The notes under the pieces are model-generated. The model made no database searches. It was not told the DNA's origin and was given only the letters and a program-made list of their open reading frames with translations. DNA of 64,000 bases from Macrostomum lignano (lineage: Eukaryota), in NCBI GenBank assembly GCA_002269645.1, contig NIVC01001979.1, forward strand, positions 62,001 through 126,000, written 5' to 3'. Shown here one piece after another: positions 812-64,000 of the stretch (position 1 is its first letter; every line of letters begins with the position of its first letter). Made by a program: the position numbers and the translations under genes.

Positions 812-1349
<538 letters not shown>

Positions 1350-26900: not shown

Positions 26901-27670
26901 AGGACCTGCTTTACAGCCAATATGTGCCTCAGTTGCAGCTATTCCAGCCGAGTTCCGCGCCGCCGCCTCCGCCACAGCTGCCGGCTCAAACAGCCAGTCA
27001 GCCGCAGCAGCCGCAACAACAGCCGCTTCCGTCGCAACCTCCGCCGCCGCCGCCACCGCCACAACCGCCACAACCACCGCAGCAGCCACCTCAGCAGCAG
27101 CCACCGCAGCAGCAGCAGTCGCAGGCCCCGGCGCAATCTGGACAGCTGGATGCCTTGCTGCGCAAGTATCCAGTGAAATGGCAGGGTCGTCTAGCCTTAA
27201 AGAACGACGAGGCCGGCGTGCAGATGCACTTTGTCCGCGGCAGCGACACGCTGGCCAAAGCGGCGCTGGAGCTGGCTGCGCCAGACGCTGCCCGGGTGTT
27301 GAAGGTCGCTCAGCGGATGCGACTGGAGCCAGCTCAGCTGGAAGGCGTCCAGCGCAAGATGGCGGACGAAGCGGAATATTGCGTATTGCTGGCCGTAGCC
27401 TGCGGCGTCAATGCGCAGGACTATCGGAGCCAGACGCACAATCTGCGCGAGGCCTTCATCAAGTACCTGCAGGAAAAGCAGGCCGCCGGCATTGTCAACG
27501 TCAACTATCCCGATCAGCAGGATGTGCCAGCCTATGTTGTGCACATCTTCCCGCCCGGCCAGTTTGCAACCTCCAAGCTGCAGCAGTACGCCAGCGATCT
27601 GTACGCTAATCTGTTTCCACAGCCCAGTTCTGAGACGCCGCACCTGCTTGTGGTCGTTACGACTGTGTGA
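17913..27670 (+). CDS. spen: Split ends/SHARP (SPEN), about 1581 aa, 4 RRMs + SPOC; exons 17913-17995, 20050-20259, 20358-20414, 22061-22134, 22479-22813, 22978-23408, 23708-23848 (tentative), 24089-24331, 24499-27670
   Basis: MKEETCYLWISQLPPNV matches SPEN RRM1 (MVRETRHLWVGNLPENV). GLFHEYRKVGKVSSIQV, DEFHPRASRTLLVSNI and KSQPTNCVWL match RRM2-4. YESMYDKIKRR motif; C-terminal SPOC LLRKYPVKWQGRLALKN...QRMRLE...EKQAAGIVNV...HIFPP...PHLLVVVTTV*. Phases are consistent; total 4746 nt. Confidence 0.92.
18146..18809. mobile_element. Intact non-autonomous DNA transposon (MITE), 664 bp, 21-bp perfect TIRs, 8-bp TSD, in spen intron 1
   Basis: TIR CCATAGTCAGGAAGGTGGCAG at 18146-18166 and its reverse complement at 18789-18809; TSD CTCTCGCT at 18138-18145 and 18810-18817; subterminal GTGCGCC repeats on both arms. 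Confidence 0.92.
23460..23665 (+). mobile_element. Probable second tRNA-related SINE family, in spen intron 6
   Basis: B-box-like GGGTTCGATTCCC at about 23508; GC-rich island in an AT-rich intron; A box not convincing. Confidence 0.45.
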
Positions 27671-40267: not shown

Positions 40268-40411
40268 TTTTGGGATTGGATGCTGCTTGTCTTCCACTTG
40301 ATTCTTCATCCGGGTCTCCCTGAGAGTCAGTAGGATTTAGCATATTTTTTCCAGTCATTATCAGTGTCATTTATTTTCACGTGTACCCGTGTTATAGTGA
40401 CTACTCCGTTA

Positions 40412-42477: not shown

Positions 42478-45400
42478 ATGAGAAGCAAAGTAAATAGTTG
42501 ATAAGTTTTTGTTTGTTTGTTGTGTAATTGTTTGTTTGTTTGTTGCTTTTTTATTTCCAAGCTCACCTATCACATATGCGAATGTGCCGCTTTCTATACA
42601 TAATTATTGCATACCCTTGTATTGAAATCAAAACGAGAGCTCTGGGGCGTCTTCTGTGCCGCTTCAGTGTGCCCCAGGCTCCCCTGATTTTCATTTTGTA
42701 CCCATATTGCTCTTTTTTTTCTTGGAAATCCTGCAGTTCAATGACGCATTACCATAGCAACTACGGAAAAGCTGTCACTTCCATAGCAACTAAGGACAAG
42801 CTGTCAGTGCCATAGCAATCAATGTGAAGCTGTAACTACCAAAGCAACTAAGGGCAAGTTGTCAGTAACCTAGCAACCAAGGTTAAGCTGTCACCACCAT
42901 AGCAACTAAGGTTAAGCTGTCACCACCACCATAGCAACTAAGGGAAAGTTGTCACTACCCTAGCAACCAAGATTAAGCTGTCACTTCCATAGCAAACAAG
43001 GCGAATCTGAAAATCCCATAGCAACTAATGTAAAGCTGTCAGCACCTGTCCCATATGTAGCCAACTAAAAATGTTAATTCCAGCGGCCGGCAGGTGACAC
43101 CAAATCAAAGCGCCGTCAGGTAGCGCCGGATGAAGCGGCGGCCGCAGCGGCCAGCGGGCCCGCAGAAATCTGTCCCAAGCAGCTGGTGCACCCGGCCAGC
43201 GGCCGTCAGCTGATTTGGCAGCAACTGCTCGGTCGGGGCGGCTTCGCCACCTGCCACAAATTTGCCTTCGAAGACGGCGGCAGCAGCGAGGTGGCCGTGA
43301 AGGTGATCACGAAGGCCAGCATCCGGACGCCCTACCTGGCTGATCGACTGCGTCACGAGCTGGAGATTCACTCCAGCCTGAAGCACCCGAACATTGTCCG
43401 GCTGCTTTGGCACCAGTCCGACTCTGCTCGGCACTATCTGGTGCTGGAGCTGTGCCAGCACCACTCTCTGGCTGCTATGCTGCGGCGTAGGCGGGTGCTC
43501 ACTCTGCCGGAGGCGCAGCACCTGTGCCGTCGGGTTGCCGAGGCCTGCTGCTACCTGCACGAGAATGGCGTGGTGAGTTGGTGTTGTTTTCTTTGTGCCA
43601 TTTCGGTGTCTTTGAGCCAAGGACCACTATAGTATAATAGGACGTAGAACTCAAAGATCGTGTTATTTTTTGGAGGCCAATTTCCTAAAAAAACTAATCA
43701 TTTCTTCATCACAAAATCAATTATTGCATTTGATCTGGGGCAGCGAAGATTTACTATTCCTTTTTTGATTTAGCATGCACAGCATGTTATTAATTTGTTG
43801 TATTTTATATACTTGTGTAGGGAAAGGTTCCTTTTCATATTGTTTTGCTTTAATTTCATAAGCCCAAAGTTGTAGATGGATTTGTAAATTAATTGCAGAA
43901 TTGACAGTGGCGAGGTGAAAAATGGAGGCAATATAAAGTGTTATGCACTCGTGTATTATAATGACACATATCAAAGTACTATATTACAATTGTATTCGAC
44001 CAGATTCACCGCGACATCAAACTGGACAATATCCTGCTAGCCAAAGGCATGGTGGCCAAGCTCACCGATTTTGGCTTGGCCGCTCGGCTCAGTCGCGCCG
44101 CTGACGCTAGCAGGCGGCGCACCCGCTGCGGCACTGTGCAGTACATGGCGCCAGAGGTGCTGGACAGGACCGCCGCCGGACATGGCTTCGGCGCCGACGT
44201 CTGGAGCCTCGGCTGCGTGCTGGTCACCCTGCTGACTGGCCGGCCGCCAGTTCGAGCAGCTACAATGGAAGCCACTCTGCGCAGCATCCGCGACTCGCCA
44301 TGGCGCCCGCCTGCGGCCCTGTGCCCGGTGACGCGGGCGTTTCTTGGCCGGCTGCTGTGCCAGAATCCCGAGCAGCGGCCCGGCATGGCCGAGGTACTGC
44401 GGGATCAGTTCTTCCGATTGGAGCCGCAGCTGCTCACCCTGCCGGAGTCCTGTCTCAGCCAGCAGCCCCGGCTCGACCGGCTGATGCCTCCACCGATGCC
44501 TCCACCGATGCCGCCGCCGCGTCAGGCGCCTCAGCTCAAATGCCCAAGGAAGCCATTAGGCTGCCTGCAGACTGGCAACGTTAACAACAACAGCAATAAT
44601 ACTAATAGCAATGCTAACCGAGCTAAGCAACAGCCGCCTGCTGATAAAATTTCCGTTTCGATTCCAAAAGTACAGACAGCTGATGTTGATGCTGCTGTCG
44701 ACGCTGCCGGAGTTGATGGCGGTGTCGCCGTTGATCGAGAAGGCGCCGCTTCCGTCATCTGCGAGCGACCGCCGCTAGCGCCCGGCGATCACAGTCGCTA
44801 TCTGGTGGCGCCACAGTCAGCTGCCGAGGCTCGGGCGGCGGCTGCCGACCTGCTTCGAGTCGCTCTGGCCTCGACGCCTACGGAAGCTCCGGATCTGGCG
44901 GCGCCTCTTTGGGTAGCCCGCTGGATGGACTGCCTGCCGCAGGGCTACGGCTTCGCCTACGAGCTCAGCGACGGCTCCGTAGGCGCCAGATTTAACGATG
45001 CCAGCAGCCTAGTTCGGGCCCAGTCCGCGCCAGGCTGCGTGCAGTTCTACGATGCCGACGGTCGGGAGCGGCTTCTGTCAGCCGACTGCGCTGAACTGGC
45101 CGGCCGGGTCTGCCTGCTGGACCAGCTGGCCGCGTACATGCGCCTCAACCTGGGCCTGGCTGGCGGCCGAGCCGATGTCGGTGGGCCGCCACCGGCAGCC
45201 CGGGTGCCAGCAGTCACGCACTGGAGCCACCGGCCCGAGGCCAATAGTGGAGGCACCGTGTTTGCACTGTCTAATGGGCTCGTGCAGGTGAGAGAGAGAG
45301 AGAGAGAGAGAGAAAGGGAGATTCGTATTTATAAGCCTGTGTCCTTGTGCGTGCCACTCTGTATCCCAGCCAGTTCAATGAGGCGCCACTCTGTATCCCA

Positions 45401-47273
45401 GCCAGTTCAATGAGGCGCCCTCTGTATCCCAGCCAGCTCAATGAGGCGCCACTCTGTATCCCAGCCAGTTCAATGAGACGCCACTCTGTATCCCAGCCAG
45501 TTCAATGAGGCGCCACTCTGTATCCCAGCCAGTTTAATGAGGCGCCACTCTGTATCCCAGCCAGTTCAATGAGGCGCCACTCTGTATCCCAGCCAGTTCA
45601 ATGAGACGCCACTCTGTATCCCAGCCAGTTCAATGAGGCGCCACTCTGTATCCCAGCCAGTTTAATGAGGCGCCACTCTGTATCCCAGCCAGTTCAATGA
45701 GACGCCACTCTGTATCCCAGCCAGTTCAATGAGGCGCCACTCTGTATCCCAGCCAGTTTAATGAGGCGCCACTCTGTATCCCAGCCAGTTCAATGAGGCG
45801 CAACTCTGTATCCCAGCCAGTTCAATGAGACGCCACTCTGTATCCCAGCCAGTTCAATGAGGCGCCACTCTGTATCCCAGCCAGTTCAATGAGACGCCAC
45901 TCTGTATCCCAGCCAGTTCAATGAGGCGCCCTCTGTATCCCAGCCAGTTCAATGAGGCGCCCTCTGTATCCCAGCCAGTTCAATGAGGCGCCACTCTGTA
46001 TCCCAGCCAGTTCAATGAGGCGCCACTCTGTATCCCAGCCAGTTTAATGAGGCGCCACTCTGTATCCCAGCCAGTTCAATGAGGCGCCACTCTGTATCCC
46101 AGCCAGTTCAATGAGACGCCACTCTGTATCCCAGCCAGTTCAATGAGGCGCCACTCTGTATCCCAGCCAGTTTAATGAGGCGCCACTCTGTATCCCAGCC
46201 AGTTCAATGAGGCGCCCTCTGTATCCCAGCCAGTTTAATGAGGCGCCACTCTGTATCCCAGCCAGTTCAATGAGGCGCCCTCTGTATCCCAGCCAGTTCA
46301 ATGAGGCGCCACTCTGTATCCCAGCCAGTTCAATGAGGCGCCACTCTGTATCCCAGCCAGTTCAATGAGACGCCACTCTGTATCCCAGCCAGTTCAATGA
46401 GGCGCCACTCTGTATCCCAGCCAGTTCAATGAGGCGCCACTCTGTATCCCAGCCAGTTCAATGAGACGCCACTCTGTATCCCAGCCAGTTCAATGAGGCG
46501 CCACTCTGTATCCCAGCCAGTTTAATGAGGCGCCACTCTGTATCCCAGCCAGTTCAATGAGGCGCCCTCTGTATCCCAGCCAGTTCAATGAGGCGCCACT
46601 CTGTATCCCAGCCAGTTCAATGAGGCACCACTCTGTATCCCAGCCAGTTCAATGAGGCGCCACTCTGTATCCCAGCCAGTTAAATGAGGCGCCACTCTGT
46701 ATCCCAGCCAGTTAAATGAGGCGCCACTCTGTATCCCAGCCAGTTAAATGAGGCGCCACTCTGTATCCCAGCCAGCTCAATGAGGCGCCACTCTGTATCC
46801 CAGCCAGCTCAATGAGGCGCCACTCTGTATCCCAGCCAGCTCAATGAGGCGCCACTCTGTATCCCAGCCAGCTCAATGCGGCGCCACTCTGTATCCCAGC
46901 CAGCTCAATGAGGCGCCACTCTGTATCCCAGCCAGCTCAATGCGGCGCCACTCTGTATCCCACTCGGTATAATACAAGGTCAGCTAAAATCCCATAGTAG
47001 CTCAGCTAATGCCAGTTACCCAACTACCTGTTTGGCCACGTCAAGGTGAACTTCCGGGACCACGTGAAGCTGGTGCTCTGTCCCAGCACCGAGTCCGTCA
47101 CCCTGATGCCGCCCAACGGGAGCAGCTCCCCCGTGCGCGTCTTCGCCTTCAACTCCGACGCCGCGGGCGCTGGTGAACCGCCGCCGCCCGAGCTGCGCAA
47201 CCGACTGCAGCTCTGCCTCAGCTTGGTGACGTCTGCCCTGTGTGCCCAGCATCCCGAAGGCGGCTGTTTTTAA
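42478..47273 (+). CDS. PLK1: Polo-like kinase (PLK1-like), about 670 aa; exons 42478-42489 (tentative), 43084-43572, 44004-45287, 47046-47273
   Basis: LGRGGFATC, VAVKVI, HELEIH, HRDIKLDN, DFGLA, RRRTRCGTVQYMAPE; linker RKPL D-box; polo box 1 WVARWMD...YGFAYELSDGSVGARFND; polo box 2 VQ|VNFRDHVKLVLCP. The start exon ATG AGA AGC AAA|GT is a phase-compatible guess. The exact PLK subfamily needs a tree. Confidence 0.88.
42748..43030. repeat. Degenerate 29-30-bp repeat, about 10 units, each containing CCATAGCAAC or CCTAGCAAC (X-box-like)
   Basis: Direct reading; lies in the putative PLK intron 1. Confidence 0.85.
45352..46962. repeat. 32-bp minisatellite (GCCACTCTGTATCCCAGCCAGTTCAATGAGGC)n, about 50 copies, filling the last PLK intron
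   Basis: GTATCCCAG at 45361 and 45393 (period 32); the array occupies about 1.6 of the 1.76-kb intron. Confidence 0.96.
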
Positions 47274-47649
47274 CTGCATGACTGTACGAGCTTGTTTAAT
47301 GCATTCGATCATTGAGTCAATCTGCTTCAATTTTTTTATTCCACAAGTCTGTTTTTCTGCTTTTTTAGCTAAAGAGTGTTTTTTGCTTGTGTTTCTTTTA
47401 GTAGCATTTATTATTGGATTCTTTCAGCTGTCAGCTGTATTGTTTTTTGCTTTCTATAAAATCACTGCCATTGTTTTTTGTATCATTTGTTTCTTTTTAG
47501 TTTGAGAACATTGATTGCCACGTAATTCATGTGTGATTAATAAAATGCCTGATTTATAAACTGCTATTAATAACCTACGATTTTAATACCTGACTGATTT
47601 ATGAAATATGTTTCATTTATTACAACTGTGTCACTTTTTTAATGATGTT

Positions 47650-48260
47650 TAGACATTGTCTTTGCCCTCCAAGACCATCCGGGAATTGTGCCTTTACCCT
47701 CAGAGACCAACCGGACATTGTGCCTTTGCCCTCAAAGACCAGCCGGACATTGTGCCTTTACCCTCCAAGACCAGCCGGACATTGTGCCTTTACCCTCCAA
47801 GACCAGCCGGATATTGTGCCTTTACCCTCCAAGACCAGCCGGATATTGTGCCTTTACCCTCCAAGACCAGCCGGACATTGTGCCTTTACCCTCCAAGACC
47901 AGCCGGATATTGTGCCTTTACCCTCCAAGACCAGCCGGATATTGTGCCTTTACCCTCCAAGACCAGCCGGATATTGTGCCTTTACCCTCCAAGACCAGCC
48001 GGATATTGTGCCTTTACCCTCCAAGACCAGCCGGACATTGTGCCTTTACCCTCCAAGACCAGCCGGATATTGTGCCTTTACCCTCCAAGACCAGCCGGAT
48101 ATTGTGCCTTTACCCTCCAAGACCAGCCGGACATTGTGCCTTTACCCTCCAAGACCAGCCGGATATTGTGCCTTTACCCTCCAAGACCAGCCGGACATTG
48201 TGTCTTTACCCTCCAAGACCAGCCGGACATTGTGTCTTTACCCCCCAAGACCATCCAGAC
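47650..48260. repeat. 32-bp minisatellite (CCCTCCAAGACCAGCCGGAYATTGTGCCTTTA)n, about 18 copies
   Basis: Period 32 (47761, 47793). Confidence 0.95.
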
Positions 48261-48271
48261 ATAGTCCCACG

Positions 48272-48304
48272 CACAGATACTATAAAGTGTTTATAGTATC
48301 TGTG
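48272..48304. mobile_element. 33-bp perfect palindrome (15-bp arms, 3-nt spacer) flanked by an 8-bp direct repeat: minimal TIR-only transposon remnant
   Basis: GTCCCACG-[CACAGATACTATAAA-GTG-TTTATAGTATCTGTG]-GTCCCACG. Confidence 0.75.
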
Positions 48305-48834
48305 GTCCCACGTGCTCTCCGCTGCGACCATGAAACCCAGACTACAAGTAACCTCACAAATCCAATTAAAATAACTCTGATCCACTGATCCACTCTACGA
48401 GTACATGTATCTATAATACCAAGCTGAAGTGAATCTAAACCATTGCCGGGCGTTCAAATCAAAATGAAAATGCATATTTTTACTTTACAGCTACTATCAG
48501 TAGCTTCTATACAATTTGCGCTAATTTTAAGTGCAAGAGCATTTCTTCGCACACTAATTTGGGTCAGCTGACTTGAGAAGCTGAGATGAACAGAGCCAGC
48601 GTAAAGTACAAATCCCAACAACTGACCAGCAGCCAGTGCGCAAACCAATGTGAAGTGCATCTAGTTCTTTGCATCCTTCCTGCAGCATAGATTATTTTGC
48701 TGATATGTACGAGTTCTATCTACCTCAAGTGACTGACGGCCTCGAAGTTAGCGTACTGAAAAGCTATATTTAGTACCATTTTATCTACGAGCATTGTCGT
48801 CTTTTAAATTTTAACTTCTAGCATACAATATTTC

Positions 48835-49525
48835 CCAGATCCCAACTTGCATGTACGCCGCCTTCCCAGATTCCCAACTGATGCCACCCTCATAGATCCC
48901 AACTGATGCCACCCTAATAGATCCCAACTGATGCCACCCTAATAGATCCCAACTGATGCCACCCTCATAGATCCCAACTGATGCCACCCTCATAGATCCC
49001 AACTGATGCCACCCTCATAGATCCCAACTGATGCCACCCTAATAGATCCCAACTGATGCCACCCTCATAGATCCCAACTGATGCCACCCTCATAGATCCC
49101 AACTGATGCCACCCTAATAGATCCCAACTGATGCCACCCTCATAGATCCCAACTGATGCCACCCTAATAGATCCCAACTGATGCCACCCTAATAGATCCC
49201 AACTGATGCCACCCTCATAGATCCCAACTGATGCCACCCTCATAGATCCCAACTGATGCCACCCTAATAGATCCCAACTGATGCCACCCTCATAGATCCC
49301 AACTGATGCCACCCTAATAGATCCCAACTGATGCCACCCTCATAGATCCCAACTGATGCCACCCTCATAGATCCCAACTGATGCCACCCTAATAGATCCC
49401 AACTGATGCCACCCTCATAGATCCCAACTGATGCCACCCTCATAGATCCCAACTGATGCCACCCTCATAGATCCCAACTGATGCCACCCTAATAGATCCC
49501 AACGGATGCCACCCTCATAAATCCC
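48835..49525. repeat. 25-bp minisatellite (GATCCCAACTGATGCCACCCT[C/A]ATA)n, about 27 copies
   Basis: Period 25 (48901, 48926); two variants are interleaved. Confidence 0.95.
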
Positions 49526-50261
49526 AATTGATGGCCCTCTCAGATCGATCCCCGTTGTTGTCCAACATGTGGAGTTGGACTCGGCCTATTTTGCAGCGAT
49601 TGCAGTCCGAGTCTGCCGTAATCTGGTGTTGGAATGGGGTTTTGGGTGTTTGGGGTGTTTGGGGCGTTTGGCGTGCTGGAGTGGGGTTATGGTGTTTGGG
49701 TGTTGGAATGGGGTTTTGTTTTGGGATTTGGGGGTGTAGCAATGGTAATTCCATTGTGAATCTGTCAAAGTCGCAGAGCGCACGACACTGACTGACCTTC
49801 ATTTGCTATTGTTTTTGTCTAATAATTGGCATGACCTAATGAAATTGAATTTAGAATCCACGTGGCTAACACTCGATTTCGTATCAATACCTCGCCCTTA
49901 TCTTTATCAAGGGCTAGGTAAGCGCAGGCAACAAAACAGGTGTTCAAACAACATTGCTTGATTAACAAAATTAACAGCAAAGGCGTGTGGACCCAGTGGA
50001 GTGCAAAAAAGGTCGGGTTTAACGCTAAATACAATAATATGGTCCCACGAGGCCACACCCCCTAGACTAGCAGCAAGACTGCAATCGTGGCAGGTAGCAG
50101 TGGCAAAGCACTAGCACCGTAGCAGAAAGACAAGACAGGTGAGAGCCGCCAAAGTTTCTCAACAGACTTTTTGTCTGCAGACAGGCGGGGTTTTTACCAG
50201 CGCGGAAAATAACCTGACTCACAATTACTAATAGCTTTTATAAGCTCTTGAATGTTAAAAA

Positions 50262-50876: not shown

Positions 50877-52510
50877 AAAGAAGCGTCATGTAAAAATCAT
50901 AGTAGCGTCATGTAAAAAATCGTAGAAGCGTCATATAAAAAATTATAGAAGCGTCATATAAAAATCATAGATGCGTCATTTAAAAAATCATAGAAGCATC
51001 ATATAAAAATCATAGATGCGTCATTTAAAAAACCATAGAAGCATCATGTAAACAATCATAGAAGCGTCATTTAAAAAATCATAGAAGCATCATATAAAAA
51101 TCATAGATGCGTCATTTAAAAAATCATAGAAGCATCATGTAAACAATCATAGAAGCGTCATTTAAAAAAATCATAGAAGCGTCATATAAAAATCATAGAT
51201 GCGTCATTTAAAAAATCATGGAAGCGTCATGTAAACAATCATAGAAGCGTCATGTGAAAATCATAGAAGCGTCACGTAAAGAATCATAGAAGCGTCATGT
51301 AAACAATCATAGAAGCGTCATGTAAACAATCATAGAAGCGTCATGTAAAAAATCATAGAAGCGTCATGTAAACAATTATAGAAGCGTCATGTAAAAAAAT
51401 CATAGAAGCGTCATGTAAACAATCATAGAAGCGTCATGTAAACAATCATAGAAGCGTCATGTAAACAATCATAGAAGCGTCATGTAAAAAATCGTAGAAG
51501 CGTCATTTAAAAAATCATAGAAGCGTCATGCAAAAATCATAGATGCGTCATTTAAAAAATCATGGAAGCGTCATGTAAACAATCATAGAAGCGTCATGTA
51601 AAAAATCATAGAAGCGTCATATAAAAATCATAGATGCATCATTTAAAAAAATCATAGAAGCGTCATATAAAAAATCATAGAAGCGTCATGTAAAAATCAT
51701 AGAAGCGTCATGTAAACAACCATAGAAGCGTCATGTAAAAAATCATAGAAGAGTCATGTAAACAATCATAGAAGCGTCATGTAAGCAATCATAGAAGCGT
51801 CATGTAAACAATCATAGAAGCGTCATGTAAACAATCATAGAAGCGTCATGTAAGCAATCATAAAAGCATCATGTAAACAATCATAGAAGCGTCATGTAAA
51901 CAATCACAGAAGCGTCATGAAAAAATCATAGAAGCGTCATGTAAACAATCATAGAAGCGTCATGTAAACAATCATAGAAGCATCATGTAAAAAAATCATA
52001 GTAGCGTCATGTAAACAATCATAGAAGCGTCATGTAAAGAATCATAGAAGCGTCATGTAAAAAAATCATAGATGCGTCATTTAAAAAATCATAGAAGCAT
52101 CATGTAAACAATCATAGAAGCGTCATTTAAAAAAATCATAGAAGCGTCATATAAAAATCATAGATGCGTCATTTAAAAAATCATAGAAGCGTCATGTGAA
52201 AATCATAAAAGCGTCACGTAAAGAATCATAGAAGCGTCATGTAAACAATCATAGAAGCGTCATGTAAACAATCATAGAAGCGTCATGTAAACAATCATAG
52301 AAGCGTCATGTAAAAAATCATAGAAGCGTCATGTAAACAATCATAGAAGCGTCATGTAAACAATCATAGAAGCGTCATTTAAAAAATCATAGAAGCGTCA
52401 TGTAAACAATCATAGAAGCGTCATGTAAAAAATCATAGAAGCGTCATGTAAAAAATCATAGAAGCGTCATGTAAAAATCGTAGAAGCGTCATTTAAAAAT
52501 CATAGAAAAT
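50877..52510. repeat. 23-25-bp AT-rich minisatellite (AAAATCATAGAAGCGTCATGTAA)n, about 1.6 kb
   Basis: Direct reading; followed by decayed GCTGAGATGTCAAGGCTT repeats to about 53600. Confidence 0.95.
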
Positions 52511-54754: not shown

Positions 54755-55690
54755 ATGGCAGAACCCAGCCCAGTCACCAAGCTCCTACTTGCCGGCAGCT
54801 GCGCCTGCGTGGCCGACGCCCTGACCTTCCCCATGGACACGGTCAAGGTGCGCATGCAGATGGCCGCCGGCGGCGCCGCTGCCGCAGCCAGCAGTTCATC
54901 CATCGTTGGCACCTTCCGCAACATCGTCTCGAACGAGGGCGCCGCCCGCCTGTACGGCGGCCTCAACGCCGGCCTGCAGCGCCAGTTCGCCTTCGCCTCA
55001 ATCCGCATCGGCTTCTACGAGCCGGTGAAGCAGCTGTACATGGACAGGCTGGGCCTCACCGCCGCCGGCGCCGGCCCGGCCACTCTCATGGCCGTCCGCC
55101 TGCTGGCCGGCATAACCACCGGCGCCATGGCCGTGTGCGCCGCCCAGCCAACCGACGTGGTCAAGGTGCGCATGCAAGGCTCCGCCGGCCGCTACCCGAG
55201 CTGCGCCGCTGCCTATTCAACCATCTGGCGCACCGAGGGCCTCGCCGGCCTATGGAGGGGCACCGGGCCCAGCGTCGCGCGCAACGCCATCGTCAACTGC
55301 GCCGAGGTCGTGTCCTACGACACCATCAAGACCTACCTGGTGGCCCGCCTGGGCATGCCGAACTCGGTCGGCACGCACTTCCTAGCCGGCCTGTGCAGTG
55401 GCTTCATCGCCACCCTGGTCGCCTCCCCGGTCGACGTGGTGAAGACCCGCCTGATGAGCGCCAGGCCGGAGGAGCGCGCCGGAGTCGTCAGCGTCGCCCG
55501 TGGCCTCTACCAGCAGAGCGGCCTGCGCGGCTTCTACAAAGTCTTCATGCCGAGCTTCGCCCGCATCGCCGGCTGGAACATCCTCATGTTTGTGCTGTAC
55601 GAGAAGGCCAAGTCCAGCTATGGCCAGCTGGCCGAACTGGCGGCCGCTCTGCCCCGGCCAGTCATGGCCAAGGAGAGGCAGGTGCTTTAA
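54755..55690 (+). CDS. UCP2: Mitochondrial carrier of the uncoupling-protein UCP1/2/3 type, 311 aa, intronless CDS
   Basis: Three PX[DE]XX[KR]X[RK] signatures (PMDTVKVR, PTDVVKVR, PVDVVKTR); GLQRQFAFASIRIGFY and RNAIVNCAEVVSYD match UCP2/3 (GLQRQMSFASVRIGLY, RNAIVNCAELVTYD). The symbol indicates clade similarity, not 1:1 orthology. Confidence 0.88.
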   Translation: MAEPSPVTKLLLAGSCACVADALTFPMDTVKVRMQMAAGGAAAAASSSSIVGTFRNIVSNEGAARLYGGLNAGLQRQFAFASIRIGFYEPVKQLYMDRLGLTAAGAGPATLMAVRLLAGITTGAMAVCAAQPTDVVKVRMQGSAGRYPSCAAAYSTIWRTEGLAGLWRGTGPSVARNAIVNCAEVVSYDTIKTYLVARLGMPNSVGTHFLAGLCSGFIATLVASPVDVVKTRLMSARPEERAGVVSVARGLYQQSGLRGFYKVFMPSFARIAGWNILMFVLYEKAKSSYGQLAELAAALPRPVMAKERQVL

Positions 55691-56539
55691 ACCCGCGGAT
55701 TGACCAGCGCGAGCCCCGAACCAACACCCCCCGAAGAAGATGAATTTTACTTCGCCTGCTCTCTGCGCTCTTACGTGTATTCGATTTGGAAACTGTCGCA
55801 TTTATAATGCGACAAAAAACGATAAAAACCAGACTGTAGAATGTACTAATAGCCGGCAGATTACATCTTGCAGACCGATCGAAATGTGTTTTAACACCCA
55901 GCGATCCTCCTTCTCGAGTTATTATTTAATTCGGTATGGTATCTAAAACCAACGACTCTGATAATTATTTTATTCAAGCTAACACCAATGTACTGTAAGA
56001 AAATTGATTCCAACTGTTTGTAAAACAAATTTGTAAAACCAGCAACAATGTAAGCAAACGAAGCGGATTTTTTGCGTTGATTAATTCGACATTTTGTTGC
56101 TTAAGCAGCGTCACTTCTGATATACGCTGTGCTGCTGCTATTTTAGACTCAACAGAGAGCCCTACATAAGCAGTCAGAAGCATAATTACATGTAACTTAT
56201 CATGTATCAATCCTTGTATCAATATAATTTAGTCATAATCGCACCAGCCGATAAATTCTGTTGCTGGGCGAGAAAAACAAGCTGAAATAATTATTAAATA
56301 TTGGGATCTTTCGCTATAATTCCTTATTTCTACGAGTAAAGATCGCTGCCTTAAAGTCTTCTAAAAAGGAAGCTCGTATACTCGTGTACTTAGAGTAGGA
56401 ATTCGTGCACATTAAAACATTTTCTACCAAAGTACGAGTAGATCTAACACTTACCGTTAACTAAAGTTAGCAAAGGGTTCTCTACTGGCAAGTCACAAGC
56501 ACAAGGACATTGGGTTCTTGATGGCTATTAGAGGTGATT

Positions 56540-57155
56540 TTAATGGTGCTGGAGGGCGACTCTTGATTTTGCAGGAGGGCGATTCTTGATGTTACTGGAG
56601 GGCGATTCTTGATGTTACTGGAGGGCGATTCTTGATGTTACTGGAGGGCGATTCTTGATGTTACTGGAGGGCGATTCTTGATGTTACTGGAGGGCGATTC
56701 TTGATGTTACTGGAGGGCGATTCTTGATGTTACTGGAGGGCGATTCTTGATGTTACTGGAGGGCGATTCTTGATGTGGTGTTGGAGGGCGATTCCTGATG
56801 TTACTGGAGGGCGATTCCTGATGTTGCTGGAGGGCGATTCCTGATGTTGCTGGAGGGCGATTCATGATGTTACTGGAGGGCGATTCCTGATGTTGCTGGA
56901 GGGCGATTCCTGATGTTGCTGGAGGGCGATTCCTGATGTTACTGGAGGGCGATTCCTGATGTTGCTGGAGGGCGATTCCTGATGTGGTGTTGGAGGGCGA
57001 TTCCTGATGGTGCTGAAGGGCGATTCCTGATGTGGTGTTGGAGGGCGATTCCTGATGTGGTGTTGGAGGGCGATTCCTGATGGTGCTGAAGGGCGATTCC
57101 TGATGTGGTGTTGGAGGGCGATTCCTGATGTGGTGTTGGAGGGCGATTCCTGATT
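56540..57155. repeat. 23-26-bp minisatellite (GGAGGGCGATTCYTGATGTTACT)n
   Basis: Direct reading; the variants are ordered along the array. Confidence 0.95.
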
Positions 57156-57690
57156 CAGAGGGGCCACACTGGAGTGCAGTGTTGAGAACCGAGTGAGAGA
57201 TAGCTTTGTAGATAACTGAGGATCTCTTTTATCTTGCCCTCAGGATTTGCCGGTGAGCGCTTTGAGGATGTTGTTATTTGAGCGGATTTTGCTGTTTAAA
57301 GCCTTGGCTTAATAGCGGGACTGGGGTCACGGAAAGGAAGACAGCTGGAGTCGCCTTGAATTCATGGTTACAGGTGATAAAGAGTGGCGGTCCATTTGGT
57401 CTTCGGTGATAGCGGCAGGTCTTTCGAAGCAAGGAATTGGTTGATCCGGTCAAGGCTGTTGAGATAAGCGGGCCGCGGGTGCAGATCGTGATTTCGTGCA
57501 GCAGGGGGTGCGGGATATCAGCTAAATATAGAAGGCGAAGAGCAGGGGCAAGAGGACGCCGCCCGGGGGGACACCAGCTATGAGGATCCTCGAGGAGGAG
57601 GCGGCGCCTCTGTAGGGGACCCTGGTGCACCGCCCATTCAGGTAGGCGCAGACCAGCTCTAAATCCATGTTCCCACGGTGGGAATGGTAG
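57155..57690 (-). mobile_element. Degenerate non-LTR retrotransposon reverse transcriptase fragment (I/Jockey-group-like)
   Basis: Minus strand: AYLNGRCTRVPYRGAASSSRILIAGVPPGGVLLPLLFAFYI*DIP (RT motif GVPQGSVLxPLLF), then NILKALTGKS*GQDKEIL...TPVWP (cf. NILKALAGTSWGQxKE...APVW). Confidence 0.8.
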
Positions 57691-57804
57691 CGAATTTTGA
57701 CGAATTTAGCGAATTCAAGCGGGAATTTTTCTAACAATTTGGTTGCAAAACTTCAGGGCTTGCTAGCCACCAGAAGTTTCAAGGTCAAAGCGCAGCGGGT
57801 CTAT

Positions 57805-58310
57805 GAAATTTGCTTGCCGAAATCTGCTAAACGGCTAGCAGATTTCGGCTAGCACATTTCGGCTAGCAAACTTCGGCTAGCACATTTCGGCTAGCACATT
57901 TCGGCTAGCAAATTTCTCGCTAGCAAACTTCGGCTAGCACATTTCGGCTAGCAAACTTCGGCTAGCAAACTTCGGCTAGCACATTTCGGCTAGCACATTT
58001 CGGCTAGCACATTTCGGCTAGCAAACTTCGGCTAGCACATTTCGGCTAGCACATTTCGGCTAGCAAATTTCGGCTAGCAAACTTCGGCTAGCACATTTCG
58101 GCTAGCACATTTCGGCTAGCAAATTTCTCGCTAGCAAACTTCGGCTAGCACATTTCGGCTAGCAAACTTCGGCTAGCAAACTTCGGCTAGCACATTTCGG
58201 CTAGCAAATTTCTCGCTAGCAAACTTCGGCTAGCACATTTCGGCTAGCAGATTTCGGCAAGCAAATTTCTCGCTAGCAAACTTCGGCTAGCAGATTTTCT
58301 GCTAGCAGAT
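57805..58310. repeat. 14-bp repeat array (TTCGGCTAGCAMAY)n bracketed by a 24-bp perfect inverted repeat
   Basis: GAAATTTGCTTGCCGAAATCTGCT at 57805-57828 and its reverse complement at 58246-58269. Confidence 0.88.
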
Positions 58311-58628
58311 CTCGTACTCCCAAACGCAGCATGGCCCTCAAAATTTTCTAAACGGGGATCTTTTATTTTAAAAAAAATGCTAGCATGTCAAAGCAGCGTT
58401 CTGTGAAATAAAAAAAACCAAACTGGTAAACAACGTCAAAAGAAAATTTAATTTTTTTATTCCAAGCTTCTCCAGTCAAAGGCGGGACACGCGGTGGTAC
58501 TTTTTATTTTCTAAACGCCAACAACAATCCTCAAGCGTTCGAGCAACAAGCGCCAGATCGATACAAAGAGTCCCTGGCAGACCCATCATCATGATCATCA
58601 GTATTTTTGAAGCATCTCAGGGAGGTTC

Positions 58629-59021
58629 TCAGAAGAAATAGCCGAGAATCTTGCCGCCAAGGTGCTTCCGCCTGGCCTCCTCGTGGTCCATGATGCCGCC
58701 GGAGGTGGTGAGCACGATGAAGCCGAACTGACGCGACGGCAGAATAGCGGATGTCCACTTCTCCAGGTCCTTCAGGTGAATGTCGTACCTGGGCGAGACC
58801 ACGCTGCACTTGTTTAGACGGCCGTTGAGCTCGACAACAATCTTGCCGGATCGGTGATCGTCGATGACCTCAAAGTCGCCGATGTAGTTTTTCCGCTGCA
58901 TCACCTGCAGGAAGCGGATGATGACCTTGGAGGAGGGCCGCAGCAGCACCTGCCGCTTGCCTTTCTTCTCGGCGTGTACAATCCGGTTAAGGGCATCCGC
59001 CAGCACTGACACGCAAACCAT
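58629..59021 (-). CDS. RPS15A: 40S ribosomal protein S15a (uS8), 130 aa, intronless CDS
   Basis: [11 protein letters not shown]...[13 protein letters not shown]...[18 protein letters not shown]...SPRYD...[34 protein letters not shown]; acceptor gcttgcAG 7 nt before the ATG. Confidence 0.96.
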
Positions 59022-60658
59022 GGCTGCTCTGCAAGCTTTGATTAATGGAATTTGGCGATTTTTTAATCTGATAATGCCTACTATAAGTAGCAAGTTCAGC
59101 TTGATAAAATAAAATATGCAACGTTTTACAATTTTGAAAATTTCTTTCCAGATTCTTTTCAAATCTCTGAATTATTATGCTAGTCACTAGGATTATATAG
59201 AAGCATGACAAGTATTATGTTAATATATTGGACAAAGGTGGATTTATATAATGTTTTTATGCAAGTCCAGTATATGGCCTGTTTGACTTTAATACTCAAA
59301 ATAAAATAGTTTTAATTGAACATAAAGATGATATTAAATACGTATACAACTGTATTAAAAAACTTCTATGCTATCAGGCCATAGCTAAATTATTTAAATG
59401 ATTATAATGATTTTTTCTTAGCAAATGTGACAAAGTTTTCAAACAGTCTTAACGATATTTGACAACCTTTTAATTATTTATTTATTATTTTAATTAAAAG
59501 TTAGCCTAAGACCAAAAAGCATAAGGGACTATAGAAATTATTTTTATACCATTTTCTATTATAGCCTTATGTCTTTAATTTCTTTTTCCTTTTGTAGTAG
59601 TAGTATTAAATGTTGTTTCTTAATTGGAGGCAACAAAACTAACCCATTGAAAAAGAAAAAAAACAATAAGACAAAATATGGGGGTATATTGATATAAAAG
59701 GTTAGTTAAGAATTAAGAAATGTTAATATATTGGCTTTATATTTTGTCATCACTATATGTTAGAACTTATTATTTTTGTTGTTTCTTAAATAACAAGTCT
59801 CTTTATAAATTTCAGTTTTATAATAAGTTTGCTATGAAAAAGATGACATATTTTGTCATTGTTGCAATGAAAACTATATATATATTTATAATTTTTTTTA
59901 CATTTAAAAATATATATAGTACTACACACCAAAAGAATAAAGTAGTAATCTATTTTTTATTTACATAAGTCCATTGCAAGTTTACTCATTTAACAAAAAT
60001 TTTTTTTATTTGAATTTGCCTTTTGCATAGAAATTGGCAAGTCAATGGACACTTAGTCTGAAATCCTTAATATAGTAATAATGATCATATATTAGTGATT
60101 ATGAATAAGGATTCTAAAAGCGTTTATAAACTAATATGGTTAGATTAGATGAGATTTTAATCTTGATTTTAGTTAGTTTCAAGATCTTGACAAAAAGTCA
60201 AGGTTTATAACTGTATGAATTTCTATGACTATGATAATAACTAGTTCAATACTAAATAATCTTTGTTTAAACTTTTATTATTGTCATTGTATACATTAAA
60301 AAATAACTAATATAATAATAGTTAATAGGTGTACTAGATGCCAATTAAGCTTAATGTTGAATCTTAATATCTTTAAAAAATGGATTTCAACTTTTTTGAA
60401 AACTTGAAAATCTCAAAAATGTAATAGGCCTATTGTTGAACCCCAAAAAAACTATTTTGCTATTAAAATTAGATGGCTATGGAACATCTTAGCAAAGTAT
60501 TATGTTTTCTCAAATTCATTTTCCAAGGCTTTTTTCTTGGAAAAAAACATTAGAAAAAATCTTTAAAATCTTAAAAATTCATTTTTGAGATACAATGTTA
60601 CTTATGAATTGCCTTTTTTGCAAGAAAAGGGCATGATGTTGTTCTCAGTTTTATCCCT

Positions 60659-62300: not shown

Positions 62301-63061
62301 GTGTAATACAGATGATTGATGATATAGACTATAGTGTGCAATATAGGGCAATGTTCAACATAGCATAGCAAATATAAAAAAGATAGGGCCTAAAATGTAG
62401 GCCTCTACATTTAAAATAAAAACCATTCATACTGTTACTGTGAAAAACACAATGTTTAAAAGGTTAAGTTAAAAATAAACATTTCTACTATTTCATTACA
62501 TTTGAAAAAAATTTAATAAATATAACACCTAGAATAGATTTTAGAATAAAAGAGCAAAATACCTAGAGTAGATTAAAATGTTATGATTTTAAAATCCTGA
62601 CGAGTTACAAATCAAAGAACCAGTTAAAATGGGGCTTTATGCCCTAGTTTTTAGGTTTTAGTTTTCTTTAATTTGCTATTGAGCTCGAAAAATTTTTCTT
62701 AGGCCCTAACTACTGTCTTGACGTACGTAAGCAAGGTGTTTAAGCTAAGTTTATCCACGAATTTTTTATCACAGCTTGTAAAAATTGTAATGCCTCGAAA
62801 AGTTTTGCTAGGATTGGCTAGGATAGGATGAGGGTCCTTATCACTTATTCTGTTACTAGCTTTAATCCCGTCAATCCAACTCTAACTACGAGCCGCGTAA
62901 ATGCTCATATTGTTGAACTAGATGATGATGATTGACTACTACTGACGTCCGTATCAAACTAAAATGCAAGAAATTAGTTCAAAATATATGTTCTACGTAG
63001 AGCAGTAAAACTAAACAAACAACCTTTGTTATTCTTATTGATTGATTTGCGATAAACTACC

Positions 63062-63170
63062 ATAGCTAAAAAGGTCTCTTACTGAGAAGACTCAATTTAT
63101 TGCATGTTAGCTATAACTCTCACGCCCAGTAGCGATGTCCAGGTTTGTCGCTCCTGAGCCCGGACCTCAG
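63062..63170 (+). ncRNA. Spliced-leader (SL)-like sequence: SL RNA gene variant/pseudogene or SL-capped retrocopy
   Basis: GGTCTCTTACTGAGAAGACTCAATTTATTGCATG (63073-63106) differs by one base from the 3' 34 nt of the Macrostomum lignano SL as I recall it (needs verification) and ends in the platyhelminth-typical ATG; short hairpins downstream. Confidence 0.65.
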
Positions 63171-63339
63171 GCAGGGTCCATATGAGCCTTTTCATATTGC
63201 TTGTTCTTGTTCTGGAACCAGATCAAATTTGTAAAGTATTACTTTTTGTCGCCTAAACTAAAGGGATATTCTTGCTATAAGTTACACGAGCTAGTTATTG
63301 AATGGCAAGAAGAATTAGAAGAGAGTTTAAAATTATGCA

Positions 63340-64000
63340 ATTACATTACATTACATTACAACGACGCTAGGGTCGGGGGGCGCTGGCGCGCACACGATTG
63401 CGAAAAAGAGGGGCAGGGCAGGTCGCAGCAGTCTGGGGAGTCAGTCCAATTGCCTCCAGGTCGGCAACAAGTGTCAGCTCCCGGAGCGTCTGGGTCCGCC
63501 CTTGGCCGCGACGGAACCGTTCGGTCGGCGGGTGCAGAACGGCCAGTCTGAGCGGGTTGTCGTCGCCGCGGGCGAACCGCCGCAGGCAGTGTCCCAGCAG
63601 CAGGTTGCGGTGCATTGCGTCCAGGGCCCGTTTGCGCATGGTTGTCATCGGGACAGCCTCCATGCCGTAGAGAATTGGATCGGCTCTACAGGCGCGGAAC
63701 AGGTGGATCTTCAGGTCGTCCCACGCTCCGGAGGTGAAGATCGGCCTGAGGTGGTGTATGGCGCGCCAGGCCTGGGTCCTCCTGTCCGCGATGATCGCCT
63801 CTGGGCTCATCACGAGGGTGCCTAGGTAGCGGAAGTCGCTGCACGTTGAGATGGCCTCGCCGTTGGGCAGGGTCAGCGGTGGGGCATTGTCAGCACCCAC
63901 ATGCAGCACCTCTGTCTTGCCTGCGTTAATCTGCAGGCCGATCCGTCGAGCGCCTTCCTCGGAGAGTCGAGTAAGAGCGTGCTGAGCTGCTACAGTGTCT
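63340..64000 (-). mobile_element. 3' end of an RTE-clade non-LTR retrotransposon with a (TGTAA)n tail, continuing beyond the window; contains lesions
   Basis: GLQINAGKTEVLHVG...CSDFRYLGTLV...RRTQAWRA...LKIHLFRA...ILYGMEA; ATTACATTACATTACATTACA at 63340-63360 is the tail. Confidence 0.85.

What the first reader, a model, noticed from the sequence alone, without database searches (positions are those of the whole stretch)
63062..63340. Spliced-leader-like sequence lacking the GT donor: variant SL RNA gene or SL-capped retrocopy
Seen: a 34-nt SL-like segment ends in ATG (63104-06) and is followed by TTAG rather than GT, although CAT|GTTAG offers a donor one base earlier. It is bracketed by an 8-bp inverted repeat (ATAGCTAA 63062-69; TTAGCTAT 63107-14) that could pair the 5' end with post-donor sequence, as in SL RNA stem I. 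A hairpin CCTGAG-CCCGGAC-CTCAGG follows. No clear Sm site was seen. Further downstream are a hydrophobic ATG start (MSLFILLVLVL) and a helix-like frame (LHELVIEWQEELEESLKL) cut by the RTE tail. Established: flatworm SLs end in AUG, and SL relics mark retroposed mRNAs in dinoflagellates. Inference: either a divergent SL RNA with a new 5' end or genomic evidence of retroposition of a trans-spliced mRNA. The SL identity rests on my recall of the M. lignano leader.
Basis: partly seen in the sequence, partly recalled or inferred. Interest (0 to 1): 0.78.

Follow-up and report, generated by a model that had tools for sequence, protein, structure and literature searches.

The report
Spliced-leader relic on RTE retrotransposon
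A 34-base copy of the flatworm spliced leader lies in the Macrostomum lignano genome not as a leader-RNA gene but as a fossil left when a trans-spliced RNA, most likely a retrotransposon transcript, was copied back into DNA; this kind of relic is already known in parasitic flatworms.

Summary
Window 63073-63106 matches the published Macrostomum spliced leader (SL) at 33 of 34 bases and is unique in the window. It is not an SL RNA gene. I recovered two genuine Macrostomum-type SL RNA genes from public contigs. They have the GTAAG donor, stem I, hairpin II, an AUUUUUAG Sm site and hairpin III. The window has none of these: identity falls from 97% to about 20-25% exactly after ATG. The fold is no better than shuffles, and a covariance model scores the locus like mature trans-spliced mRNAs.

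The window is M. lignano contig NIVC01001979.1. Extending it shows that the neighbouring minus-strand RTE is a 2956-bp insert with a perfect 12-bp target-site duplication. A near-full-length SL sits at its own 5' end, so that SL was on the retrotransposed RNA. With this RTE removed, the finding's SL lies in sense upstream of a second, related RTE-like body. An 80-nt leader and two nested small elements separate them. Two homeologous contigs carry the same arrangement and show no constraint on the relic.

Verdict: an SL relic of retroposition, most likely of an RTE transcript. It is a new member of a known kind.

The parts
63073..63106 (+). SL relic #1. It is a DNA copy of nt 12-45 of the mature Macrostomum spliced leader, with C->A at 63085, and it ends exactly at the exon's 3' ATG.
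   Evidence: 33/34 identity to the published SL. Unique in the window. The covariance model matches only positions 19-48. A BLAST gapped alignment can be stretched to 63067 (TAAA-AAGG), but that extension is not significant.
63107..63186 (+). 80-nt post-SL leader, including the hairpin at 63153-63171. It is unrelated to the SL RNA intron.
   Evidence: 13/64 and 16/64 identity to the two real introns, p=0.68. No copy elsewhere in the sequence in hand. Identical in both homeologs, 0/80 differences. Not alignable with the post-SL leader of RTE#1 (p=0.84).
63187..63339 (+). Left part of a MITE-like dispersed repeat of about 263 nt with terminal inverted repeat CTTTTCAYATT. RTE#1 splits it.
   Evidence: 77-82% identical copies at L008 2664-2940 and 3766-3865 and at L014 4491-4756. 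These copies run uninterrupted across the RTE#1 insertion point. The right part is L013 2720-2611, beyond the window.
63328..63339 (.). 3'-side copy of the 12-bp target-site duplication of RTE#1 (TAAAATTATGCA on the + strand).
   Evidence: The perfect second copy is at L013 2721-2732, equivalent to window position 66296-66307. The motif is present once in paralogous MITE copies.
63340..64000 (-). 3' part of RTE#1. The whole element is 2956 bp (L013 2733-5688). The tail (TGTAA)n is at 63340-63360 and the stop codon at 63367-63369.
   Evidence: Tandem repeat. Open RT-like frame. Homologs carry PF00078. Exo_endo_phos and RVT_1 hits on the rest of the element. Its 5' end carries SL relic #2 at L013 2760-2803.
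63062..63114 (.). Its palindromic core TAGCTA is also a 6-bp direct repeat (63063-68 / 63108-13) bracketing AAAA+SL+T.
   Evidence: It is 7/8 in the homeologs. It could be microhomology or a target-site duplication at the 5' junction, or chance (about 1-3% by my estimate). This is not resolved.

Best explanation
Window 63073-63106 is a spliced-leader relic. It is the DNA copy of the 5' leader that trans-splicing had put on an RNA, written into the genome when that RNA was reverse-transcribed and integrated. It is not an SL RNA gene and has no function as one.

The RNA was most likely the transcript of an RTE-type non-LTR retrotransposon, here called RTE#2, on the window's + strand. Its endonuclease-coding body begins beyond the window. 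The inferred sequence of events is as follows:
1. An RTE transcript was trans-spliced at an acceptor in or upstream of its 5' UTR.
2. The element's own reverse transcriptase copied the capped RNA by target-primed reverse transcription up to, or nearly up to, its 5' end. The last roughly 11 nt of the SL were lost.
3. A MITE-like element and a foldback element later inserted into the leader.
4. A second SL-capped RTE copy (RTE#1, minus strand) inserted into the MITE.
5. RTE#2 lost its 3' part.
6. The whole nested arrangement was then duplicated with the M. lignano genome.

Shown: the SL identity and its exact 3' boundary; the absence of every SL RNA gene feature; the SL of RTE#1 lying inside its target-site duplication; and the collinear homology of the RTE#2 body downstream of the finding's SL.

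Inferred: that SL#1 and the RTE#2 body were one RNA; the order of the nested insertions; and the 5' truncation.
For: (1) SL identity is 33/34 and stops exactly at the exon end. The next 64 nt are 20-25% identical to the intron of two genuine Macrostomum-type SL RNA genes, which are 50/64 identical to each other.

(2) Five independent trans-spliced mRNA contigs show the same pattern, SL...TTGCATG followed at once by unrelated sequence. The covariance model scores the window (16.9 bits, positions 19-48) in their class (21.5-22.9 bits), not with the genes (137-138 bits).

(3) Real genes fold into three hairpins with a single-stranded AUUUUUAG, z -3.3 and -4.6. The window gives z -0.3 and -0.8.

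(4) The window equals NIVC01001979.1 (100% over 14 kb). RTE#1 is bounded by a perfect 12-bp target-site duplication. Just inside the 5' copy it carries CCATAAAGACGGTCTCTTACTGCGAAGACTCAATTCATTGCATG|TTACTC.... That is direct proof that SL-capped RTE RNA retrotransposes in this genome.

(5) With RTE#1 removed, the unit starting at SL#1 is collinear with the RTE#1 5' part in the same orientation. Six blastn blocks show 75-88% identity and tblastx gives 1.4e-35. The endonuclease region is 46% identical, E 8e-27, with the QEH, VYAP and GDFNA motifs.

(6) The intervening 616 nt resolve into an 80-nt leader, a MITE with copies elsewhere, and a foldback element. This leaves SL#1 about 90 nt and SL#2 about 50 nt upstream of the shared body.

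(7) In 212 kb of M. lignano sequence, the only SL-like matches are these two, in each of three homeologs.

(8) There is no constraint. SL#1 has 3/34 substitutions between homeologs against 25/773 in the flank. The true SL exon, by contrast, is identical in three Macrostomum species and two environmental genes.

(9) Precedent: 597 SL-bearing loci next to LINE/LTR elements in parasitic flatworms were interpreted the same way (PMC12582326).
Against: - No target-site duplication or 3' tail was found for RTE#2 within 2.3 kb. Its homology to RTE#1 stops inside the endonuclease domain, so a later deletion has to be assumed.
- The 80-nt leader after SL#1 is not alignable with the leader after SL#2 (p=0.84) and has no other copy in hand. 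Its membership of RTE#2 is therefore inferred from position and orientation only.
- The 6-bp direct repeat TAGCTA brackets AAAA+SL+T. This would also fit a 39-nt SL-only insertion unrelated to RTE#2.
- None of the three homeologs has an empty site.
- The RTE clade assignment rests on architecture, not phylogeny.
- The two reference SL RNA genes come from environmental contigs of unidentified Macrostomum-like species, not from M. lignano itself. They do agree with the published description: 109 bp, GTAAG donor, three hairpins, Sm-like site.
Confidence: 0.72

Rival explanations
1. The relic is independent of RTE#2. One version is a retrocopy of a cellular trans-spliced mRNA or non-coding RNA whose body is the 80-nt leader, with the rest lost. 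The other is a short insertion of about 39 nt holding only the leader (for example a cDNA of the free SL exon or of an mRNA 5' end captured at a break), flanked by the duplicated TAGCTA. On this reading the RTE#2 body lies downstream by chance in a transposon-rich stretch.
For: A TAGCTA direct repeat lies immediately on both sides (9-mer 8/8... TAGCTAAAA/TAGCTATAA is 8/9). The putative empty site ATAGCTAT is a palindrome. The leader after SL#1 is not homologous to that of RTE#1. RTE#2 lacks a tail and a target-site duplication.
Against: Only two SL relics occur in 212 kb, and both lie in sense just upstream of related RTE bodies. No ORF or parent-gene signal follows the SL. The A-run lies 5' of the SL, the wrong side for a poly(A)-primed insert. 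A 6-mer repeat has roughly a 1-3% chance expectation by my estimate, and microhomology at LINE 5' junctions is common (established knowledge).
Confidence: 0.2
2. The locus is an SL RNA pseudogene made by DNA-level duplication of an SL RNA gene. A later rearrangement or insertion replaced everything 3' of the exon and the first 11 nt.
For: ATG|TTA resembles ATG|GTA at 2 of 3 positions. SL RNA pseudogenes without a donor are reported in trematodes (PMC12582326).
Against: This needs two breakpoints, one of them exactly at the exon-intron boundary. Nothing of the 64-nt intron survives although the exon is 97% intact. No upstream similarity to the real genes' flanks is significant.
Confidence: 0.05
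3. The locus is a functional variant SL RNA gene that donates a CTGAGAAG leader, using the GT at 63106-63107 (CAT|GTTAG) as donor.
For: A GT exists one base upstream of the canonical boundary. An 8-bp inverted repeat and a downstream hairpin exist.
Against: There is no Sm site. The predicted fold is not better than shuffles. The covariance model gives only a partial exon match. The C->A change breaks a predicted C-G pair of stem I. The homeologs have three further changes in the exon and a weakened inverted repeat. Rfam gives nothing.
Confidence: 0.01

Closest known systems
SL-bearing loci next to LINE/LTR elements in parasitic flatworms (Evolution of SL-RNA Genes..., Mol Biol Evol 2025, PMC12582326)
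   Same: A leader sequence occurs without any other SL RNA feature, within 500 bp of a mobile element. The authors interpreted these loci as integrated retrotransposon transcripts that had received the SL by trans-splicing. This locus would fail the same filters: no donor, no Sm-like motif, and a mobile element within 500 bp.
   Different: That work covers Trematoda and Cestoda and reports the class in bulk as discarded candidates. Here the host is a free-living macrostomorph. The neighbouring copy, RTE#1, gives the full anatomy: target-site duplication, near-full-length SL, 5' UTR, APE, RT, pentanucleotide tail and target-site duplication again.
DinoSL relics at the 5' end of dinoflagellate retrogenes (Slamovits and Keeling 2008; reviews PMC6050394, PMC5585692)
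   Same: A DNA-encoded leader marks reverse transcription of a trans-spliced RNA.
   Different: There the templates are cellular mRNAs that become functional retrogenes, often with tandem truncated relics from repeated rounds. Here the template is most likely a retrotransposon, the relic is single, and nothing suggests a function.
Canonical Macrostomum SL RNA gene (109 bp; PMC8629364; examples L005:615-723 and L007:1589-1697)
   Same: It shares nt 12-45 of the exon, 33/34.
   Different: The window lacks the first 11 nt, the GTAAG donor, stem I, hairpin II, the AUUUUUAG Sm site and hairpin III.
The mis-assigned 'SL RNA' of the first M. lignano genome paper
   Same: It was an SL joined to non-SL-RNA sequence and mistaken for an SL RNA gene. 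Ustyantsev and Berezikov showed that it maps to the 5' end of a trans-spliced protein-coding gene and does not fold canonically (PMC8629364).
   Different: That case concerns a protein-coding gene's 5' end. I could not check whether the SL is encoded in the genome there.
Site-specific non-LTR elements that insert into SL RNA genes (SLACS, CZAR, CRE in trypanosomatids; NeSL-1 in C. elegans). From my own knowledge, not tested here.
   Same: A non-LTR retrotransposon is physically associated with spliced-leader sequence.
   Different: Those elements interrupt real SL RNA genes at a fixed position within the exon, and the rest of the gene is present on the other side. Here the SL ends at the splice junction and is co-oriented at the element's 5' end. 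That is the signature of splicing, not of insertion into a gene.

Membership tests
SL RNA gene (Macrostomum type) | Full-length 44-45-nt SL exon at the 5' end | tested here: not met
   Only nt 12-45 are present (33/34). The first 11 nt match 4/11, and the gapped score is reached by 7.5% of local 14-mers.
SL RNA gene (Macrostomum type) | GT donor (GTAAG) immediately after the exon's ATG | tested here: not met
   ATG is followed by TTAGC. The genes have GTAAG.
SL RNA gene (Macrostomum type) | Stem I pairing the exon's CGGUCUCUUAC with the donor region, then hairpin II, a single-stranded Sm site (AUUUUUAG) and hairpin III | tested here: not met
   Intron identity is 13/64 and 16/64, p=0.68. Fold z is -0.29 and -0.84 against -3.32 and -4.58 for the genes. 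No RAU(n)GR motif occurs in 63107-63230.
SL RNA gene (Macrostomum type) | Full-length match to a covariance model of the gene | tested here: not met
   16.9 bits over model positions 19-48 of 109. The genes score 137-138 bits and mature mRNAs 21.5-22.9 bits. The model was built from only two genes.
SL RNA gene (Macrostomum type) | Sequence constraint on the exon | tested here: not met
   3/34 substitutions between homeologs against 25/773 in the flank. The true exon is invariant across species.
SL RNA gene (Macrostomum type) | Expression as a TMG-capped small RNA that donates its leader | not testable with these tools
   No read data are available.
SL-tagged retrocopy (relic of a reverse-transcribed trans-spliced RNA) | Leader identity ends exactly at the exon's 3' end and is followed by non-intron sequence | tested here: met
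SL-tagged retrocopy (relic of a reverse-transcribed trans-spliced RNA) | The insert is bounded by a target-site duplication and has a 3' tail | tested here: inconclusive
   For SL#1/RTE#2, none was found in 2.3 kb; only a 6-bp TAGCTA repeat lies around the leader itself. For the neighbouring SL#2/RTE#1 the feature is fully met, with a 12-bp perfect duplication and a (TGTAA)n tail.
SL-tagged retrocopy (relic of a reverse-transcribed trans-spliced RNA) | An identifiable template (parent gene or element) lies downstream in the same orientation | tested here: met
   There is collinear homology to the RTE#1 5' part, tblastx 1.4e-35, and the APE region is 46% identical, E 8e-27. The 80-nt leader itself has no identified parent.
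Processed pseudogene of a cellular trans-spliced mRNA | An ORF or homology to a parent protein-coding gene soon after the SL, plus a poly(A) tail | tested here: not met
   The longest ORF is 24 codons in 230 nt, against 163-433 codons in five real mRNAs. The six-frame protein search found nothing; that search holds M. lignano gene models but not raw ORFs. There is no A-tail.
RTE-clade non-LTR retrotransposon (for RTE#1) | Single ORF region with an APE endonuclease followed by a reverse transcriptase, about 3 kb in all | tested here: met
   Exo_endo_phos E 2.1e-5, 24.9 bits, just above the cut-off. RVT_1 is weak, 19-21 bits, below the cut-off. Homologs carry PF00078. The element is 2956 bp and frameshifted.
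RTE-clade non-LTR retrotransposon (for RTE#1) | Very short 3' UTR ending in short tandem repeats, with no poly(A) | tested here: met
   The stop codon is at 63367-69 and the (TGTAA)4 tail at 63340-60, so about 6 nt lie between them. That this is an RTE hallmark comes from established knowledge (Malik and Eickbush 1998).
RTE-clade non-LTR retrotransposon (for RTE#1) | Phylogenetic placement of the RT within the RTE clade | not tested
   No clade-level library or tree was available. The best database relatives are unnamed metagenome proteins at 55% identity or less.

The most novel reading that the evidence does not exclude
RTE-type retrotransposons of M. lignano may routinely depend on SL trans-splicing to turn read-through or promoter-less transcripts into capped, translatable, transposition-competent RNAs. 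On this reading the leader is a regular, heritable 5' module of new copies. The zig-zag of sense and antisense SL fragments at the 5' end of RTE#1 (antisense nt 17-10, sense nt 7-14, antisense nt 19-12) would record the reverse transcriptase switching strands on the leader's own stem I. Genome-encoded SLs would then date and count retrotransposition events across flatworms.
Probability: 0.3. Interest if true: 0.55.

Novelty: new member of a known kind. Interest (0 to 1): 0.33.

Why it matters
There are three practical points.

1. Annotation. SL-like hits without a donor must not be annotated as SL RNA genes. This error has already happened once for this species (PMC8629364).

2. Retrotransposon biology. 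The neighbouring RTE#1 copy gives clean structural proof in a free-living flatworm that SL-capped retrotransposon RNA is a substrate for integration, because the leader lies inside a perfect target-site duplication. A recent survey of parasitic flatworms only inferred this in bulk. It suggests how 5'-promoter-less RTE elements may obtain a cap.

3. Dating. The relic and its nested insertions are shared by three homeologous contigs, so they predate the M. lignano genome duplication. They could serve as dated markers.

None of this overturns current understanding.

Tried and rejected
- Rfam at gathering threshold on the whole window and at E<=10 on 62900-63400 gave no SL or snRNA family.
- Exact look-ups of window ORFs (63201-63551, 63367-63909, 58629-59162) are not on record, because the collection holds gene models, not raw ORFs.
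- A six-frame translation of 63104-63339 searched against 5.8 billion proteins gave no hit. This says little about paralogous DNA.
- The RTE C-terminus against Pfam gave nothing, and against the protein database gave only relatives at 55% identity or less.
- BLAST of 62500-63340 and of the RTE part against the rest of the window found no other copy.
- A tRNA scan for a SINE head found none.
- I searched for a target-site duplication of the SL#1 5' flank, first within 63100-63345 and then within 2.3 kb after removing RTE#1. Only chance-level matches turned up.
- The hypothetical empty site made by removing the TAGCTA-flanked insert gives only a 67-codon open frame on the minus strand, which is not informative.
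- Extending SL homology into the 11 nt upstream is not significant.
- Aligning the two post-SL leaders is not significant.
- I considered SLACS/NeSL-type insertion into an SL gene. I rejected it because the break is at the splice junction and no other half of a gene is present.
- I considered U6/L1-type template-switch chimeras with SL RNA. I rejected this because such a chimera would carry the intron half of the SL RNA.
- The Wasik et al. 2015 paper (PMC4603488) is not held, so I could not compare its mis-assigned 'SL RNA'.
Full report
**1. The observation**

The window reads ...CCATAGCTAAAAA GGTCTCTTACTGAGAAGACTCAATTTATTGCATG TTAGCTATAACTCTCACGCCC... with the 34-mer at 63073-63106. It occurs once in the window, even allowing three mismatches, and never in 100 shuffles.

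The published M. lignano SL is CGGTCTCTTACTGCGAAGACTCAATTTATTGCATG (PMC8629364). The full consensus is 44-45 nt and begins (G)CCGTAAAGAC (PMC5173321). M. cliftonense and M. hystrix have the same sequence (PMC10468722 supplement).

The window therefore matches nt 12-45 at 33/34, with C->A at 63085. The first 11 nt are not recognisably present: 4/11 match ungapped, and 7.5% of neighbouring 14-mers reach the gapped score.

**2. Is it an SL RNA gene?**

The published gene is described only in words: 109 bp, GTAAG donor, three hairpins, Sm-like site. I therefore scanned public contigs for the SL core. The scans returned seven contigs.
- Five are metatranscriptome-type contigs with the SL at their ends (L001-L004, L006).
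- Two are genomic contigs with the SL inside them: L005, and L007, which is labelled as a Flavobacteriaceae MAG.

L005:615-723 and L007:1589-1697 are complete SL RNA genes. Their sequence is GCCGTAAAGACGGTCTCTTACTGCGAAGACTCAATTTATTGCATG|GTAAGACACCGKTGATCCAATNNTGGATC..TATTTTTAGCAGCCC...GGGCT. They fold into stem I (the exon's CGGUCUCUUAC paired with GUAAGACACCG), hairpin II, a single-stranded AUUUUUAG and hairpin III. Their z-scores are -3.3 and -4.6.

Measured against this yardstick the window fails every test:
- Identity to the 64-nt intron is 13/64 and 16/64 (p=0.68 against shuffles), while the two genes share 50/64.
- The fold z-scores are -0.29 and -0.84.
- Rfam finds nothing.
- A covariance model built from the two genes scores them at 137-138 bits full length. 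The window scores 16.9 bits over model positions 19-48 only. That is the same class as the five mature mRNAs, at 21.5-22.9 bits.

In those mRNAs the sequence after ...TTGCATG diverges at once, exactly as in the window.

**3. Finding the source contig**

Protein look-ups of raw ORFs failed. A homology search with the RPS15a-like ORF at 58629-59162 found annotated M. lignano proteins. Their cluster member P0131 led to three contigs of assembly GCA_002269645.1.

L013 (NIVC01001979.1) is 100% identical to the window over 14 kb. The mapping is: window position = 69028 minus L013 position. L013 extends 5 kb beyond the window end.

L011 and L012 are homeologous copies at about 96% identity. Both carry the SL-like sequence with the same CTGAGAAG change, the same downstream sequence and the same RTE. 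The arrangement therefore predates the duplication, and no empty site is available.

Between homeologs, the 34-mer has three substitutions (GGTC -> AATT). The other counts are 25/773 in the upstream flank, 0/80 in the next 80 nt, and 13/661 in the RTE. This gives no sign of constraint, although the true exon is invariant across species.

**4. The neighbouring RTE is itself SL-capped**

On L013 the minus-strand element of the window runs from 2733 to 5688, 2956 bp in all. It is GC-rich and frameshifted. It gives Exo_endo_phos and RVT_1 signals. About 6 nt separate its stop codon from a (TGTAA)4 tail.

The element is bounded by a perfect 12-bp target-site duplication, TGCATAATTTTA, at L013 2721-2732 and 5689-5700. 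The second copy corresponds to window 63328-63339.

Just inside the 5' copy lie 27 nt made of sense and antisense SL fragments. A near-full-length leader follows, joined to the element's 5' UTR: CCATAAAGACGGTCTCTTACTGCGAAGACTCAATTCATTGCATG|TTACTCTGAGC... at L013 2760-2803.

Because this leader lies inside the duplication, it was part of the RNA that was reverse-transcribed.

**5. What follows the finding's own SL**

I joined the two flanks of RTE#1 in a script and compared the result with RTE#1. This gives six collinear, co-oriented blocks at 75-88% identity: unit positions 716-739, 764-807, 813-867, 1018-1088, 1144-1162 and 1226-1404 match RTE#1 positions 159-826. tblastx gives 1.4e-35. A more permissive alignment starts the homology at about unit position 651-672.

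The region encodes an endonuclease 46% identical to that of RTE#1 (E 8e-27), with the motifs QEH, VYAP and GDFNA. A second, related RTE-like body, RTE#2, therefore lies downstream of the finding's SL on the same strand.

The 616 nt between the SL and that body break down as follows:
- an 80-nt leader, 63107-63186;
- a MITE-like repeat of about 263 nt with terminal inverted repeats CTTTTCAYATT. It has 77-82% identical copies at L008 2664-2940 and 3766-3865 and at L014 4491-4756, and these run uninterrupted across the RTE#1 insertion point;
- 4 nt;
- a foldback element of about 285 nt, L013 2322-2606.

With these removed, SL#1 lies about 90 nt and SL#2 about 50 nt upstream of the shared body. 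The two short leaders are not alignable with each other (p=0.84).

**6. Weak points**

RTE#2 stops inside the endonuclease domain, at about L013 1558. No tail or target-site duplication was found in the next 2.3 kb, so a later deletion must be assumed.

The 80-nt leader has no other copy in hand. The 6-bp direct repeat TAGCTA (63063-68 and 63108-13) brackets AAAA+SL+T. It would also fit a 39-nt leader-only insertion. I rate that, or an unrelated RNA template, at about 0.2.

A DNA-level pseudogene needs a breakpoint exactly at the splice junction, and I rate it at about 0.05. A functional variant gene is contradicted by every structural test, and I rate it at about 0.01.

**7. Comparison with what is known**

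The closest description is in the 2025 survey of parasitic flatworms. There, 597 candidate loci with only a partial leader lay next to LINE or LTR elements, and the authors discarded them as probable integrations of trans-spliced retrotransposon transcripts (PMC12582326).

Dinoflagellate DinoSL relics are the classical analogue for cellular genes. For M. lignano, the only related note I found is that the first published 'SL RNA' was in fact the 5' end of a trans-spliced gene. Searches of the held literature found no description of SL-capped RTE copies in Macrostomum.

I therefore file this as a new member of a known kind. The neighbouring RTE#1 copy is an unusually complete example of it.

**8. 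Handling note**

The RTE copy was used only as it stands in the public contig.

Noticed in passing
L007 1589-1697 (JAGQZA010000190.1, 'MAG: Flavobacteriaceae bacterium isolate HKST-UBA79'): A contig of a bacterial metagenome-assembled genome carries a complete Macrostomum-type SL RNA gene (138 bits, canonical three-hairpin fold). It is most likely flatworm DNA mis-binned into the MAG.
   Followed up: partly
L013 2733-2759 (window-equivalent 66269-66295, beyond the window): The 27 nt between the target-site duplication and the SL of RTE#1 are a zig-zag of SL pieces: antisense nt 17-10, sense nt 7-14, antisense nt 19-12. This looks like template switching or snap-back of the reverse transcriptase on the leader's stem I region.
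   Followed up: partly
window 58629-59027 (-): This is an intronless RPS15a/uS8 gene (132 aa, P0131) with an acceptor-like ttgcag|AGCAGCCATG just upstream. The other M. lignano paralogs (L008-L010, L014) are split by introns over 2.1-4.8 kb and are 87% identical in the last exon. It may be an old retrogene that is now the trans-spliced copy.
   Followed up: partly
window 63187-63339 plus L013 2611-2720; also L008 2664-2940 and 3766-3865, L014 4491-4756: A MITE-like dispersed repeat of about 263 nt has terminal inverted repeats CTTTTCAYATT. Its copies lie upstream of several RPS15a paralogs.
   Followed up: partly
L013 2322-2606; window 31540-32253: These are foldback elements whose arms are built of short subrepeats (TTTGCCCGC-like in L013, TTTGCTTGCC-like in the window). 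They may belong to one class of small palindromic repeats.
   Followed up: no
window 62913-62982: A perfect 8-bp terminal inverted repeat (TTGAACTA/TAGTTCAA) encloses a C-box-like GATGATGA. Rfam gives a weak SNORD100-like hit (15.2 bits, E 3.7). No D box precedes the 3' stem, so it is probably not a snoRNA.
   Followed up: no
L005 596-614: Just upstream of the environmental SL RNA gene, CGCCGTAAACTCTTT partly repeats the first 9 nt of the SL. The second gene, L007, lacks this.
   Followed up: no
window 793-1323, 33934-34651, 40293-41985, 45289-46735, 47561-48392, 48722-49671, 50879-52500, 56459-57178, 57747-58311: Long arrays of 14-33-nt tandem repeats fill much of the intergenic and possibly intronic space between conserved genes. 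Those genes are HDAC 10031-10864, a SPOC-domain protein 24467-27670, transportin-3 37467-40267, Polo-like kinase 44049-45413 and a mitochondrial carrier 54755-55690.
   Followed up: no
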